DNA of 64,000 nucleotides from Zygnema circumcarinatum SAG 698-1b (lineage: Eukaryota; Plantae; Zygnematophyceae): positions 2,036,689-2,100,688 of the forward strand of contig CM074809.1 of NCBI GenBank assembly GCA_037447605.1. Direction: 5' to 3'. Shown here piece by piece: positions 46,527 through 53,103 of the stretch. Within the stretch, counting starts at the first letter, position 1, and every line of letters begins with the position of its first letter. A program made the translations under genes and the position numbers. The notes beneath the pieces are model-generated. The model was not told the DNA's origin and searched no databases. It worked only from the letters and a program-made list of their open reading frames with translations.

Positions 46527-46735
46527 CCAATATCGGAAAACTGACGAGTATCGTAATATCGATAAATATCGGAAAACTGACCAGTAGCAGTAGACTGACC
46601 AGTATTGTCAAACTGACCAACATCGTCAAACCGACCAATATCGGAGAACTTACAAGTATCGTCAGACCGGACAGTATCGGAAACTGACCAATATCGGTAA
46701 TTTGGCCAAGATTGGCAAAGCGACCAGTATCGGCA
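46527..46735. repeat. Degenerate ~18-bp minisatellite (AAACTGACCAATATCGG-like, ~11 units)
   Basis: Repeated ACCA(A/G)TATCG units directly upstream of the 59K gene. Confidence 0.7.
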
Positions 46736-46960
46736 CTTCGCCGGCGCCGGCCAGTTTTGCCGGCCGACCGCGGACACCAATACGCCCCGAATATGGCGAT
46801 ATGCCATTCGAGCCGAATACGACAACGTAAGGGTCCCATGACCATGCGGCCGTCCGTACGGTACACGAGGGCGGTGAGGGCGCCCTCCAGGGCCCACTTT
46901 CTAAGGTTGCGCTCGCGTGCAGGGAAGGAGCTGGCGTCTGCAGACAGCGCGGGGAGGGCC

Positions 46961-49900
46961 ATGGCGGACAGCCCGGCAGGGCCGCCTTGGAGGCCTTCGG
47001 AGGTCTACCTGCCACATGGCGGATGGAGGGGAAGCCCGAGTGGCCCCGCTATCAATGCGGGATGGAGACCCACCGCTCAACTTTCTGGACCGCCGCCGTT
47101 CTTTCCCGCAAACTTTTGGCCCTCCGACCAACAAATCTATCCAGGGTCAACTTCTCCTGCTCGACCCCTTGCTCCGCATCTTGTTTCTTCCTTTCCTCGG
47201 CACCTCTACCCTAGTGGTAACAGTCTTGCAATACCTGGAGGGTTTGGAGAGGCACCAGTGCCGATTCATTATCAAACACAAATGCAAATGCAATCGGAAT
47301 CTGCCCCAAACGGTTACAATTCAATTCAGCAATCTCATTTTCCACTACAAAGCTCACAACAAGTGCCTATGCCCTCGCCGCCACTTCCTCCGCCTTCCCT
47401 GCACCCTTCTCATGCCCCTCCTCTAGCCGCTATTCCGGGAACTGCGCATTCTCGTCAGGCCTCAGCTCCTGCCCCTTTCGCATCTTACAGTCCTCATTTC
47501 AAGCAAACCAGTGTGGAATCCCGAATTATTAGGCCTCCGTTTGCCATAAGTTTAGTTGCCCCGTCTGAAGGACGAGAAATGGAAGGTGGGAAGGTGGCAC
47601 GTCCGTCTTTGGACGCATTTTTGCAGGAGCTGGGTACTAGAGTGACTTCGGATGGTGGGGCAAGTAAGCCAGATTTTAAGAACAACATTTTGCAGCTGCA
47701 GCGGATGACGAATAGTAAGTTGGACGAGCAGGGAATGAATCAAGTCGAGAAGGTGCTGGAGCAAGGAAAAAAATTTCCAAACGAAAACCGAGTGGTCGAG
47801 GATGAGGGTGCCATGGCGAGCGCACTGGGAGAAGATATTTTTTCAGTTCCTTGGAAGTTGCAAGAATATTTTATTAGAGTTGGCCACCAGTTGGCCCTGC
47901 TGGAGGATGTGTATGTTTCTTCCTTTTCTCATGTATCCTTTCCACTCGTCTTCTTGTCCAAAACCTTCCTTTGCGTTGTCCTTCTCTTGCATTTTTGCGG
48001 CAGGCGGTCATTTTCTTAGCACCTTATTTACATGACGTATTAAATGGGCATAATCTTCAAGACCCACTTTATCGCTAGTAATACCGTATCTCTAGCGTTG
48101 GCTATCCAGGATTACGTAGGCACCGTAGCAGCAAACTTATTCAATCATTCTTCAGTAGTCTTTGCAGTTATAATCCTGGAAGTGATTCTGAAGTTCAGAA
48201 CCGCGTCTAGCGGATATCGTGCTATGGTACAAATCATTTTGAACCAGTTTCCTTCACGTCCGCTTCATTGCTTACGGGTGCAGGATTGCAGAACTGCAGT
48301 GTTATTCTGTAGGAGAAGCAGAGGATCATTTGGAGGGTCGTCCTGGCCTTACTGGATGCAATGAAGAGGATGGAGGTAGAAGTGGCGGAGAGGATGATTG
48401 CCAGAAGCTGGAGGAGGCCACCACTTCGACTGTCAAGCATAGCTTGGTGCATGTCAGAAACGCGGTGAATGAGATACAAACAGCATGTACAGATACTCGA
48501 CCGAAGGATATGGACAGAAACCAGAGTTTGCCTGTCGCGAACGGATGGAGAGCTATGGTTTCCTCGGAGGGTTTGAGAGCCAAGGAGAAACAACCCAGGG
48601 AACGGAAGACGAGAGCGATGCAGGCAGCATTGAAATTAGAGAAACAGCTGAGGGCTTTGTTGGCTCCTCTAGAGAGGGCAATTGATGCAGGGGGGGGTTC
48701 ACCGACACTGGAAGCTTTGGAACTCAGCCTTCTAGTGAAGCAAAGAGACAAAGTGCTTCGCAACAGGAAGTGGAGAAAGAAGAAACGGCAAAGAACGGCA
48801 GAGGCTGTGCGGAAGGTAATGTGAAAAGATTATAGCTTTTGGACCTTTCACAGATTTTGGCTTACCCTTGTTTCTTACAGAAGGAAGGCTTGCACATCAA
48901 GCCTTTAAAACTTGGATGATGCAGCAAGCATTCGAATAAAAGGGCGCAATTCTTGTACTTGGGTCCTGAATTACATAGTTGAACACTCCTGATTTAGCAG
49001 AATCTTGTGAACTCCATGACGACTCAAGTCTCAGTTTAGGAAGTTGGAATCCAGCACTTCTCAGCTTGTCTGCGTTAAGCATTATATTTGAGGCAATTCG
49101 CACATTTAGCCCATTTCTACATTGAATTTTGATTCAAGCTGTCCGTCAGCAGTTGTTGCTGTCTGCAAGCCGTTATGGTATGGAAGGATTAGATCATTAA
49201 ATTGTGAGCTAGTTCCACAACAGCTGACAACGAACAAGAAAGGTACAAGAAAGTTTTCATGTTGAGAACAGTAAGGAGTACAACAAAAGTTACAATTTTT
49301 TTTACAGATTACTGTAGCATGCCAATAGCAATGATGCGCCCACATCGTTGAGCTTCATGAATCTTCCTTTTGTAGAAGGAAATCTTACCAACCAGGGGGT
49401 GTTCTGAGCTTGCAGCACAGGCCGCCTGTTGCATGATTCTACTCTGCAGGACTTAGAAGCAGGATAGCTTGTATGCTTTTCTTTTGGCTTCACGTTTTCA
49501 TTAGTCTAGTAGGGGATTTGTGCTGTTTGATTGTTCAATCTCATCAGGAGCGCGAAAAGTTCGAAGAGCTGGACCGGGCGGCAGATGAATGGCGAGCACA
49601 GGAACTTGCGAAGTCCATCGCACAGCGTAAGGTGGGTGCATGCGTTATCGTAGGACCCGATTTTCAGGCTCATAACTTTTTTGTCCCTCTGCAAAACAAT
49701 ACATTTGTTGGATTTACCGCAGTGATCGTAAAAGCATTTGTTTCTTGGGTGCGTGCAGATGGAGGAGTTGCGTGAACTTGCTGAAGCAGCAGCTGAGGAC
49801 GAGCGTCGTAATACAGAGAAGGAGGTAGGTGAAACGAGCACCCTTTGCACTACCGACATATGCAGTTGTCATTTTTTTTTCAGATTGCCCTGTTTTCTAG

Positions 49901-52211
49901 GGTATACCCATTCAGGAGTCAACATAAGGTTCTTACAACCAGCTTTAGCCGCCGCTGGCAGTTTCTGCTTTATGGTTGTGTCTCGAAAATCAATTATCTT
50001 TGTGGCAGCTACTTATCTTGTCCACACTTCATAGAAATAGGTACCATAACTGCAGGTCAGTCTGTTGCTAGTAAGTGAGCATGATCTTTCGGCTTTGCAA
50101 AAGTCCATGTACGGCGGCAAACCGATATTGAATGGATACATAATGCATGCCTTATTGAATTTGTAGTAATGCTGTGTCAAGGCTAGCAGAATGATGTGAC
50201 TAGGACTGTTCGGGATGAAAGCTTGAGAATGTGTGACTTTTAATCGTGAACTTATGCTGGTCACATGTGGACAGCTGGAAATGGTACTCATGCTCGAGCA
50301 CCTTCAGGAGTTGCGAGACCTGCGCATTTCCAAGCTTCGGCGGCAAGGTGAAACTTTTACCCCTCCTTCCCTGCCGAATGTTGCTTCTCGACCTTCTTTT
50401 CGCTTCAACTGGTCATGCCTGCGTTCTTATGACAGAAGGAATTGTGTTTATGGTTGGGCATTACTGATCTTCGATGGGAACAGTCCAGAGGCCACTGATA
50501 GTCAAGTTGCAGATACATTGTCGCATCCCATGGATAATCAGCACTGCACGCAATAAATCCTTTTCAAAATGGAAGCTGATAACACAATTATGGAAAGTGA
50601 TTGTGCGGCTTGCTGTAGTGGCATTTTTTTTCCTTTGTTCGGGTTTGTCGCCTCCCGACAGAGGTGACTGCAGAGGCCCAGAGCTGGGTTGGGAAAGTGC
50701 AGATATGACTGCAGGGGGGATAGGAAAGGCAGTCATAATCCTTCCACCCTTCCCTTAAGAGCAAAGGAACGCTGATATTGGACTGCGCAGTGGATATGAT
50801 GTTTGAATCGTATCGTGGCCAATTGATGTTATTGCTTATTTGATATGCGTCATGCCAAACTTAACGAGATCCTAGGAGTTTGTTGCCAACACCTCAATGG
50901 GTGCGGAGGGATGGCGTTCAGGGCACTTACTGCCGGAAGAAGATGACAAATTCTTGGAGAGAGTGAAGGCAGCCGTGGAGGAGGAAGAGCGGCTGATTGC
51001 AACCAGTAAGACCGCAGCTGCCATAGCCAGCGCAGAAGAGGCAGCTAAGCAGGGGTCCTACCCAGAGCAAGGGCATGCCCAGTCTATGGATAGCGCAGCG
51101 CAAAAGAAAACCCAGTCTAGTGGGAACTTGGCGGATGACGACTCTAACTCGCAGCTGGATGGAGATGCTGGCGAAGACATTGCAAAGGGAGATGTTTTGA
51201 GACATGGGCATGCATCAATAGTGAAAAGCTCAGAAGGTTTAGGTGAAAGACGTATGGAAGGAGAGAAACGAAGTGACCATGAGAGGGGGGCTGCAAAGGA
51301 GCCGAGTAGGAGTGGAGTGGAAGAAATGCCCCATTTGAGTGCGGACGCATATGATTATTACTATGGAAGCCAGCGAAGCATGAGTCGTCTTGTGGAGGTG
51401 AGTGTTCGCAGTAGCCACGATTCTCTGTTGCAACGATCGATATAAGAGCATTCCGTTATCTCTCACTTTCTCTTTCCCCTTAGTCCTTGCATCATTCATT
51501 TGATCTTTCGGCAACTTTACACAGCTGATTTTGAGTCAGACAGGATGCCAACAGATTCACGTGTCATGTAAATGCTGTCACTGAATTGACAAAAGGTAGT
51601 ATGTGACGATCATGACCATTTGTGCATCAATTTTTCCCGCGTGTTTGTCATCGAATTTGAAACAGCTTTGTTCGCATGCTGTCCTGTCTCTCACATGTCT
51701 CCAGATTATTTTGTTTCACCCTCACGATGTTGTCCTCCTTGGAAGTCAAACATGGTTCTGTTTCTCTGCCTGCCAGGTGCGGCGCCACTGGGATGCCTTC
51801 ATCATGCAGGGAGGCAGGTGAGCACTGGCCATATAGAGTTCACTTTGTGAAATCGTTTGTCCCTTGAGGCAGAACTACAAGCAAGAAGGGCTGCTTTGCA
51901 TGGGTTGTTTGAATGGGTCTGTTTATCTCAGTACAGCACGCCAGTGATTTCTGCACTTCCCCTTCTCATTTACACCTACGAGCATCATCTCAAGCTTCCC
52001 TTTGATGACAATCAATAAACTCTTCTTGAAGTTCTCATGGCGCAAAGGTGTCGAGGTTGTGTGGCCACTTCTTAAGTGATGTCGTAATTTTGTTGACTCT
52101 GATTTCTTCTTCAGCTTTCCGTGTAATGTTTGCAGTCGAATCCCGGGTCATTGGGTGGAGCCCTCTCCGCCATCAGACCCTGTGTGGGCCTCGGTCTTGG
52201 CACAGACCTGA
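46961..52211 (+). CDS. SNRNP59: U11/U12 snRNP 59-kDa protein (PDCD7-like; minor spliceosome), 8 exons
   Basis: Exons 46961-47910, 48284-48815, 49548-49631, 49759-49824, 50275-50347, 50922-51397, 51777-51817 and 52136-52211; all introns are GT-AG and the junctions join in frame. Motifs recognised from plant 59K proteins: NRKWRKKKRQR, ADEWRAQE, LQELRDLRI.KL..QGH.LPEEDDKFLERV, RRHWDAF..GGSRIPGHWV.P. Confidence 0.85.
47933..47941 (+). promoter_or_regulatory. Perfect U12-type 5' splice-site motif GTATCCTTT in intron 1 of the 59K gene
   Basis: Exact match to the RTATCCTTT consensus, 22 nt downstream of the U2-type donor GTATGT at 47911. Function is inferred. Confidence 0.55.
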
Positions 52212-52514
52212 GATGATGAAGCAAAGCGGAGCACCACGTCATGCAGCGATAGGAATACAAGTTTCACCCACAGTGGGGAACTGCGTGACAGTCCCCAACA
52301 GTTTCTTTTGTTCATATAGCATGCCTCATTTTCCCGTTTACGAGGTTGGTGAAACGGCACATGCATCATTGTGATAATTGAGGGTAAAACTTTAGGTCGA
52401 GGCTTTGCATCTTTAAAAGGAAGCTGAAATTTGGCGGTCTTCTGTCCCACTGCCCCCTTACTGCGTCTCACCTTGTCCACTACTCTCACCCACAGGATCC
52501 TTGATCCACATGTC

Positions 52515-52566
52515 ATCCACATCCACATCCACATCCACATCCACATCCACATCCACATCCACATCC
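52515..52566. repeat. (ATCCAC)n hexanucleotide microsatellite
   Basis: About 8 perfect units between the convergent 59K and exonuclease genes. Confidence 0.95.
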
Positions 52567-53103
52567 ATCCATCCTTGAAATTGATCCACATGTTTAGAGT
52601 GAGCCCAGTGCTGCATATGGTACAATGTCTTGGCACATGAGTTCCGGCACGTTGCCATCAACTCTACTAAGGACTGGCTAGAGGTTCTGGCACGGCTCAA
52701 TGCCCAGACCCGGACTCAACGTTATTGGCGAAACTCCTTATTCTAGTCTACCTACTGGAACTGCGACGGACAAGACTATGATACATAAATACAGTACAGA
52801 AACCTCTTGTCAGGCTAATCACTTCGACCTTCCAGCCGGGCACTACACCGAGCTCTGCTTTGCTGAATACTTCAAACATTTGAAACATGAAACGTAAGAA
52901 ATCCCACAACCGGTTGGTATGCCCCCTAAAGCATACCGTGGTTCACGAACAGATTTGGGAAACCCATAGTCAAACAGGTTCAGGGGAAGGCCTGTTCAGA
53001 CCATGTTTTCGTCGTTCACCAAGCGGTGTTCATATGTACACAACTGACTCCTACAAAAGGAGGGCTTCCGATGAATTCAACTCTCCTTGCCGCCGTTTCC
53101 ACA

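What the first reader, a model, noticed from the sequence alone, without database searches (positions are those of the whole stretch)
47911..48364. Possible minor-spliceosome feedback switch: a U12 donor inside intron 1 of the U11/U12-59K gene
Seen: the in-frame U2 donor (47911) is followed 22 nt later by a perfect U12 donor, GTATCCTTT (47933), with a partial TCCTTT copy just upstream. A U12-like branch motif TTTCCTTCAC (48248-48257) lies 27 nt before the acceptor CAG (48283). Splicing the U12 donor to that acceptor shifts the frame to a TGA at 48362-48364. Known: U11-binding USSE elements autoregulate the U11-48K and U11/U12-65K genes; I know of no such element described for 59K. Inference: abundant U11 snRNP would divert 59K pre-mRNA to an NMD isoform. 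Alternatively, the U12 donor could give an in-frame product using CAG 48299 or AC 48275.
Basis: partly seen in the sequence, partly recalled or inferred. Interest (0 to 1): 0.75.

Follow-up and report, generated by a model that had tools for sequence, protein, structure and literature searches.

The report
Competing U2/U12 donors in 59K gene
The first intron of this plant-lineage gene for a minor-spliceosome protein (U11/U12-59K) has two start sites that are both used in real RNA; the second looks like a minor-spliceosome site and gives a truncated reading frame, so the gene may throttle its own output, as is already proposed for another minor-spliceosome gene.

Summary
Every motif and coordinate is as stated. 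Public RNA-derived contigs show both predicted junctions: 47910>48284 in run X7 and 47932>48284 in run X1. Each is the only surviving junction in its run, and the DNA is identical in both.

The gene is a U11/U12-59K (PDCD7) orthologue of 8 exons and 765 aa. The upstream GTATGT donor gives the conserved protein junction (LLEDV|IAELQCYS here, LLEDV|MAELRCYS in a relative). It sits at the same position and phase as intron 1 of three mosses and a liverwort.

The GTATCCTTT donor adds 22 nt, shifts the frame and stops at TGA 48362-48364. That is 451 nt before the next exon junction, so the isoform is predicted to be an NMD target.

Three things are inferred, not shown: splicing at 47933 by the minor spliceosome, NMD of the isoform, and feedback. 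Two results weaken the reading. The branch motif has one mismatch and lies 27 nt from the acceptor, against an optimum of 11-13 nt. The motif is also absent from intron 1 in six land-plant orthologues.

It is not a USSE. The closest known case is the competing U2/U12 donor circuit of CENATAC. I file it as a new member of a known kind and found nothing described for 59K.

The parts
46961..52211 (+). U11/U12-59K (PDCD7) gene, from ATG to TGA. It has 8 exons and a productive ORF of 765 aa.
   Evidence: Exon joints come from spliced contigs of runs X1 and X7. The ORF was checked by script. The best relatives of exon 6 carry Pfam PF16021 PDCD7 and are named U11/U12 snRNP 59 kDa protein.
46961..47910 (+). 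Exon 1 coding part. It has a Pro-rich N-terminal extension and ends in the conserved block ...FSVPWKLQEYFIRVGHQLALLEDV.
   Evidence: X7 has a contig at 46924-47911 and X1 has one at 47056-47933. BLASTP against relative P0001 gives 52% identity over the last 33 aa.
47911..47919 (+). U2-type donor tgt|GTATGTTTC. This is the productive 5' splice site, at the ancestral position and phase.
   Evidence: The joint 47910>48284 is present in X7. It gives LLEDV|IAELQCYS, against LLEDV|MAELRCYS in the relative's cDNA. The intron has the same position and phase in mosses and a liverwort.
47911..47932 (+). A 22-nt segment that is intron in the productive mRNA and exon extension in the alternative mRNA.
   Evidence: The X1 exon-1 contig runs unbroken to 47933, and the joint 47932>48284 is present.
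47921..47926 (+). Partial TCCTTT copy inside a pyrimidine run.
   Evidence: Seen in the sequence only. It has no RTA prefix and there is no evidence of function.
47933..47941 (+). U12-type donor consensus cat|GTATCCTTT (9 of 9). It is used as a 5' splice site.
   Evidence: Searches show the motif. The joint 47932>48284 is present in X1.
48248..48257 (+). U12-like branch motif TTTCCTTCAC. TCCTTCAC matches TCCTTRAY at 7 of 8 positions, and the motif also fits a U2-type yUnAy.
   Evidence: The A at 48256 is 27 nt from the 3' splice site. This is inside the 40-nt search window used by classifiers but beyond the 11-13 nt optimum.
48281..48283 (+). Shared acceptor CAG, holding the first AG after the branch motif.
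   Evidence: Both joints end at 48284. The script confirms it is the first AG.
48284..48815 (+). Exon 2.
   Evidence: Contigs lie at 48284-48816 in X1 and 48284-48813 in X7. BLASTP against P0001 gives E 3e-17.
48362..48364 (+). Premature TGA of the 47932>48284 isoform. The ORF is 350 aa and lacks the PDCD7 domain.
   Evidence: The stop lies 451 nt upstream of the exon 2/3 junction.

Best explanation
Intron 1 of the U11/U12-59K gene carries two competing 5' splice sites that share one 3' splice site at 48283.

The upstream site (GTATGT, 47911) is a weak U2-type donor at the ancestral intron position. It yields the productive 765-aa mRNA.

The downstream site (GTATCCTTT, 47933) is a consensus U12-type donor. 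I infer that the U11/U12 di-snRNP recognises it together with the TTCCTTCAC branch motif and that the minor spliceosome splices it. That keeps 22 extra nt, shifts the frame and stops translation at TGA 48362. The result is an mRNA that encodes only the N-terminal 324 aa plus 26 foreign residues. By the exon-junction rule it should be an NMD target.

59K is itself a U11 snRNP protein, so high minor-spliceosome activity would divert its own pre-mRNA into the unproductive form. That is negative feedback, with the same logic as the competing U2/U12 donors of CENATAC.

Shown: both junctions exist in RNA, each dominates one data set on identical DNA, and the frame consequences are as stated. Inferred: U12 dependence, NMD, and feedback.
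For: -: the joint 47932>48284 is seen in X1 only and 47910>48284 in X7 only. The X1 exon-1 contig does not break at 47910. The X7 intron contig does not break at 47932. Neither run differs from the window at any letter in this region.
- frames, the stop codon and the 451-nt distance to the next exon junction.
- the U2 junction reproduces the conserved protein junction of a relative's cDNA.
- the position and phase of the U2 donor are conserved in bryophytes, so the U12 donor is the added element.
- the donor matches the U12 consensus at 9 of 9 positions. It lacks +5G/+6T, while the gene's other six donors all follow a G and look U2-type.
- the gene is PDCD7/59K.
- the same architecture is described for CENATAC, with a productive U2 donor, a U12 donor leading to a premature stop, a shared 3' splice site, and a gene for a minor-spliceosome protein.
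Against: - The branch motif has C where the consensus has R, and it lies 27 nt from the acceptor (optimum 11-13 nt). It also fits a U2 branch site.
- By simple count, U1 complementarity is no worse at 47933 (6 of 11) than at 47911.
- There is no RTATCCT in intron 1 of 59K in Calypogeia, Physcomitrium, Ceratodon, Sphagnum, Populus or Erythranthe. No close relative's genomic locus could be obtained.
- A transcript expected to be an NMD target is the main junction in X1, which is unexpected if NMD is efficient.
- Contigs show presence, not absence or true ratios.
- Only two RNA data sets were laid on the region, and their conditions are unknown.
Confidence: 0.55

Rival explanations
1. It is an ordinary U2-type alternative 5' splice site. 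GTATCCTTT resembles the U12 consensus by chance. The major spliceosome uses both donors, and the choice is set by SR/hnRNP factors, temperature or stress rather than by the minor spliceosome.
For: - The shared acceptor has a usable yUnAy and 60% pyrimidines in its last 30 nt.
- The branch-to-acceptor distance of 27 nt suits U2 better than U12.
- U1 pairing counts are similar for the two donors.
- The motif is not conserved in six orthologues.
- One RTATCCTTT per 64 kb is about chance.
Against: - A used GT followed by exactly ATCCTTT has a chance of about 6e-5, and this one sits in one of the few genes for U11 snRNP proteins.
- GTATCC lacks the +4A/+5G/+6T that U2-type donors rely on, yet it is the surviving junction in X1.
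- A near-consensus U12 branch motif lies upstream of the first AG.
Confidence: 0.22
2. It is a true U12-type splice without a regulatory role. A lineage-specific minor-spliceosome donor arose inside a U2 intron (a twintron-like arrangement), and its use is tolerated unproductive splicing rather than a feedback device.
For: - Nested or competing U2/U12 sites are known and often have no shown function.
- Conservation is lacking in bryophytes and angiosperms.
Against: - The near-complete change of dominant junction between X1 and X7 on identical DNA argues for regulated choice rather than low-level noise.
- Its location in a U11 snRNP gene mirrors the 48K, 65K and CENATAC circuits.
Confidence: 0.15
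3. It is a USSE-type enhancer. U11 binds the motif without splicing it and activates a nearby U2-type splice site.
For: A partial TCCTTT lies 12 nt upstream of the full motif. USSEs regulate the U11-48K and U11/U12-65K genes.
Against: - The motif is itself used as a donor.
- There is only one full copy.
- No upstream 3' splice site or poison exon appears in the contigs.
Confidence: 0.03
4. The U12 donor makes an in-frame protein variant by pairing with CAG 48299 or AC 48275. The frameshifted form is a by-product.
For: Both combinations are in frame. AC 48275 lies 19 nt from the branch A, closer to the U12 optimum.
Against: - Neither joint is present in X1 or X7 contigs.
- Both would remove or displace the conserved IAELQCYS block.
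- GT-AC combinations are disfavoured.
Confidence: 0.05

Closest known systems
CENATAC (CCDC84) competing U2/U12 5' splice sites (Cologne et al. 2019; de Wolf et al. 2021, PMC8280824; review PMC8329584)
   Same: [quoted passage not shown] The U2 donor gives the productive mRNA and the U12 donor gives a premature stop. The gene encodes a minor-spliceosome protein. An autoregulatory loop is the proposed reading.
   Different: - The gene differs: 59K/PDCD7 of the U11 snRNP, against a U4atac/U6atac-associated factor.
- The CENATAC sites are conserved across animals. This one is absent from six land-plant orthologues.
- The CENATAC switch has been seen in patients with a minor-spliceosome defect. 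No perturbation data exist here.
USSE (U11 snRNP-binding splicing enhancer) of SNRNP48 (U11-48K) and RNPC3 (U11/U12-65K) (Verbeeren et al. 2010, 2017; PMC5473595)
   Same: A U12-type 5' splice site sequence in a gene for a U11/U12 protein gives an unproductive mRNA, which yields homeostatic feedback. 59K binds both 48K and 65K.
   Different: A USSE is a tandem pair of donors that are not spliced and that activate an upstream U2-type 3' splice site. It is conserved from plants to animals. Here there is a single donor that is spliced itself, and it is lineage-specific.
U2/U12 twintrons and nested introns (prospero, NCBP2, SRSF10, and others; PMC8329584)
   Same: The major and minor spliceosomes compete on one intron and give alternative mRNAs.
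   Different: In most of those cases both products are coding, or the minor pathway is the productive one (SRSF10). Here the minor pathway is the unproductive one.

Membership tests
PDCD7 / U11/U12-59K protein | Pfam PF16021 (PDCD7) domain | tested here: inconclusive
   Single exons give no Pfam hit. The best homologues of exon 6 (P0001, P0017, P0021, P0022) all carry PF16021 above its cut-off.
PDCD7 / U11/U12-59K protein | Orthology to proteins named U11/U12 snRNP 59 kDa, with shared gene structure | tested here: met
   P0001 aligns to exon 1 and exon 2. Its own relatives are annotated as 59K in Physcomitrium and many angiosperms. The relatives' gene structure resembles the window's 8 exons, and the position and phase of intron 1 are shared with the mosses and the liverwort.
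U12-type (GT-AG) intron | 5' splice site RTATCCTTT | tested here: met
   GTATCCTTT at 47933-41 matches 9 of 9 positions.
U12-type (GT-AG) intron | Branch site TCCTTRAY | tested here: inconclusive
   TCCTTCAC at 48250-57 matches 7 of 8 positions, with C at the R position. No PWM score was computed.
U12-type (GT-AG) intron | Short branch-to-3' splice site distance (optimum 11-13 nt) | tested here: not met
   The distance is 27 nt. This is inside the 40-nt classifier window but outside the optimum. The acceptor does hold the first AG after the motif.
U12-type (GT-AG) intron | Splicing depends on U11, U12 and U6atac snRNAs | not testable with these tools
   This needs snRNA knock-down or suppressor-snRNA experiments.
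USSE | Tandem repeat of U12-type 5' splice sites | tested here: not met
   There is one full copy plus a bare TCCTTT.
USSE | Sites are not used as donors and activate an upstream U2-type 3' splice site | tested here: not met
   The site is used as a donor, and no upstream acceptor or poison exon appears in the contigs.
CENATAC-type competing-donor circuit | [quoted passage not shown] | tested here: met
   The joints 47910>48284 and 47932>48284 are both present.
CENATAC-type competing-donor circuit | The U2 donor is productive and the U12 donor gives a premature stop | tested here: met
   Searches give the frames. The conserved junction is shown.
CENATAC-type competing-donor circuit | Both donors are phylogenetically conserved | tested here: not met
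   The position of the U2 donor is conserved. The U12 donor is absent in six orthologues. Close relatives could not be tested.
CENATAC-type competing-donor circuit | Donor choice responds to minor-spliceosome activity | not testable with these tools
   There is only a between-data-set switch of unknown cause.

The most novel reading that the evidence does not exclude
In this streptophyte lineage the U11 snRNP protein 59K has acquired its own minor-spliceosome sensor. A bona fide U12-type donor placed 22 nt inside an ancestral U2 intron can take over almost all splicing of the pre-mRNA and shut off 59K production. This would be an independent invention of minor-spliceosome homeostasis, alongside the 48K and 65K USSEs and CENATAC. 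It would work by direct U12 splicing rather than by enhancer action, in the bridging protein that links 48K to 65K.
Probability: 0.4. Interest if true: 0.7.

Novelty: new member of a known kind. Interest (0 to 1): 0.6.

Why it matters
Feedback control of the minor spliceosome is known for 48K and 65K (through USSEs) and is proposed for CENATAC. 59K is the protein that bridges 48K and 65K in the U11/U12 di-snRNP, and I found no such control described for it.

A working U2/U12 donor competition in 59K would show that this regulatory logic has arisen repeatedly, in different genes and lineages. It would also offer a compact natural reporter of minor-spliceosome activity in a non-seed-plant system: two junctions 22 nt apart.

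The apparent near-complete switch between two public RNA data sets makes the idea directly testable with existing reads.

Tried and rejected
- **Exon-by-exon Pfam scans** and a PDB sequence search with exon 6 gave nothing.
- **Word search** with the exon-1 open frame, read through the donor region, gave no hit.
- **Word search** with the relative's 835-aa ORF returned only that protein itself.
- **Metagenome scan** with exon 2 gave no relative. No genomic locus of a close relative could therefore be obtained.
- **Rfam** on the whole window gave no snRNA or other family.
- **RNA folding** of the two-donor region showed no structure beyond shuffles (z -0.22). **Repeat search** found no tandem U12 donor.
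- **The other RTATCCTT sites** in the window are copies of a dispersed repeat or isolated hits, not U12 introns.
- **Look-ups for P0021, P0051 and P0056** found no record, and the barley file was too large.
- **The three cDNA contigs of the relative** (L001, L006, L007) are identical and show only the productive form.
- **Runs X8 and X9**, which carry the same species label, hold nothing of the gene at 90% likeness.
- **A decaying ancestral U12 intron** was rejected as an explanation. The U12 donor is out of frame with the shared acceptor, and the U2 donor sits at the conserved position and phase.
- **The joined spliced protein** was never sent to a search tool. Exons were joined only inside scripts to read frames and lengths.
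- **No SpliceRack or intronIC PWM scoring** was possible offline.

Full report
**Observation**

- Exon 1 ends ...GAGGATGT at 47910.
- It is followed by GTATGTTTC (47911).
- A bare TCCTTT lies at 47921-26.
- GTATCCTTT lies at 47933-41.
- TTTCCTTCAC lies at 48248-57.
- The acceptor is CAG at 48281-83. It holds the first AG after the branch motif and lies 27 nt from the A at 48256.

RTATCCTTT occurs once in the 64-kb window, against 0.61 expected from shuffles. On sequence statistics alone the motif would be unremarkable.

**RNA evidence**

The look-up of sequencing runs listed seven runs of the same organism that hold the stretch. I laid X1, X7, X8 and X9 on 46800-52400.

X1 and X7 are RNA-derived. 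Both carry the same six further GT..AG joints, which define exons 2 to 8.

At intron 1 the two runs differ.

- In X7 the exon-1 contig ends at 47911 and a contig joins 47910>48284.
- In X1 the exon-1 contig runs on to 47933 without a break at 47910, and a contig joins 47932>48284.
- Both runs also hold an intron-retaining contig.
- Neither run differs from the window by a single letter across 47056-48313, so the difference is not a cis polymorphism.

Contigs drop rare variants, and their depths are not local measures. What is shown is that both junctions exist and that a different one survives graph cleaning in each data set. The in-frame alternatives at 48300 and 48276 were not seen.

**Gene identity and model**

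The joints give the following model.

| Exon | Coordinates |
|---|---|
| 1 | 46961-47910 |
| 2 | 48284-48815 |
| 3 | 49548-49631 |
| 4 | 49759-49824 |
| 5 | 50275-50347 |
| 6 | 50922-51397 |
| 7 | 51777-51817 |
| 8 | 52136 to the stop at 52209-11 |

The productive ORF is 765 aa.

Single exons give no Pfam or PDB hit. A full HMMER search with exon 6 found 23 proteins. The best hit (P0001, E 3.7e-14), together with P0017, P0021 and P0022, carries PF16021 PDCD7. P0001's own relatives are annotated as U11/U12 snRNP 59 kDa protein in Physcomitrium and many angiosperms.

**Which isoform is productive**

P0001 comes from a cDNA contig of a relative (L001). The full ORF of that contig is 835 aa and reads ...LALLEDV MAELRCYS.... 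The U2 junction here reads ...LALLEDV IAELQCYS....

In Physcomitrium, Ceratodon, Sphagnum and the liverwort Calypogeia fissa (identified), intron 1 sits after the aligned LL-x-x-V, with the V codon split GT|N. The 47911 donor is therefore the ancestral, productive one.

The 47932>48284 isoform adds 22 nt. It reads ...EDVYVSSFSHDCRTAV... and stops at TGA 48362-64, giving a 350-aa ORF that lacks the PDCD7 domain. The stop lies 451 nt before the exon 2/3 junction, and five more junctions follow. By the >50-nt exon-junction rule (established knowledge; also stated in PMC6717393) it is a predicted NMD substrate.

**Is the second donor a minor-spliceosome site?**

For:
- It matches the U12 consensus at 9 of 9 positions.
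- It lacks +4A, +5G and +6T.
- TCCTTCAC matches the U12 branch consensus at 7 of 8 positions and lies upstream of the first AG.
- Given a used GT, the chance that ATCCTTT follows is about 6e-5.
- The gene encodes a U11 snRNP protein.
- The U2 donor it competes with (tgt|GTATGT) is the only one of the gene's seven donors that does not follow an exonic G. That weakness would make it tunable.

Against:
- The branch-to-acceptor distance is 27 nt, against an optimum of 11-13 nt (PMC3584512). It does lie within the 40-nt window that classifiers search.
- The same motif fits yUnAy.
- Raw U1 complementarity is similar for both donors.

U12 dependence is therefore inferred. I put it near 0.75.

**Conservation**

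There is no RTATCCT or TCCTTRAY in intron 1 of 59K in Calypogeia, Physcomitrium, Ceratodon or Sphagnum. There is also no RTATCCT in intron 1 in Populus or Erythranthe.

No genomic locus of a close relative could be found. The relative's three cDNA contigs show only the productive form. The element is therefore lineage-specific, or at least unproven beyond this genome.

**Comparison with what is known**

A USSE is a tandem pair of U12 donors that are not spliced and that activate an upstream U2-type 3' splice site in SNRNP48 and RNPC3. This element fails both defining features.

The architecture matches CENATAC: competing U2 (productive) and U12 (premature stop) donors with a shared 3' splice site in a minor-spliceosome gene, read as autoregulation.

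Searches for PDCD7 or 59K together with autoregulation found only component lists.

**Verdict**

This is a real alternative 5' splice site pair with an unproductive U12-consensus donor in the 59K gene. It is most likely a CENATAC-like homeostatic device (overall confidence about 0.55). The rivals are a chance U2-type alternative donor (0.22) and a non-regulatory U12 splice (0.15). I file it as a new member of a known kind.

Earlier scan notes on other pieces of this genome report U12 introns and an RBM41 orthologue. I did not check them and use them only as leads that a minor spliceosome exists here.

Noticed in passing
L008:3490-3510 and L008:4125-4165: In Populus euphratica 59K, the intron after ...KMKKQ has the donor aag|GTATCCTTG and an ACCTTTAAT about 20 nt before its CAG. 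This may be a U12-type intron in poplar 59K. The motif is absent at the same intron in Erythranthe, three mosses, Calypogeia and the window.
   Followed up: partly
window 46527-46696: An 18-nt tandem array of 9.5 copies (consensus CCAGTATCGTCAAACTGA) lies about 265 nt upstream of the 59K start codon, in the likely promoter region.
   Followed up: no
window 52514-52567: A perfect (CATCCA)9 microsatellite lies about 300 nt downstream of the 59K stop codon.
   Followed up: no
window 17273, 38152 (+) and 2450 (-): Three copies of a dispersed repeat share TTTACCTCG..GATATCCTTGTCTTC and a CTCCCTTGAC about 293 nt downstream. They are repeat copies, not U12 introns.
   Followed up: partly
window 46961-47910; L001:10-723: 59K here is 765 aa and the relative's ORF is 835 aa. 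Both carry a long Pro-rich N-terminal extension that the 400-500-aa moss, liverwort and angiosperm proteins lack.
   Followed up: partly
window 46924-47933 versus 48284-52400: In both X1 and X7 the exon-1 contigs have about half the k-mer depth of the contigs for exons 2 to 8. This could be 5' coverage bias or an undetected second transcript start.
   Followed up: no
runs X8-X10: Three 2017 runs carry the same species label but hold none of this gene at 90% likeness. They may come from a different strain or species filed under one name.
   Followed up: no
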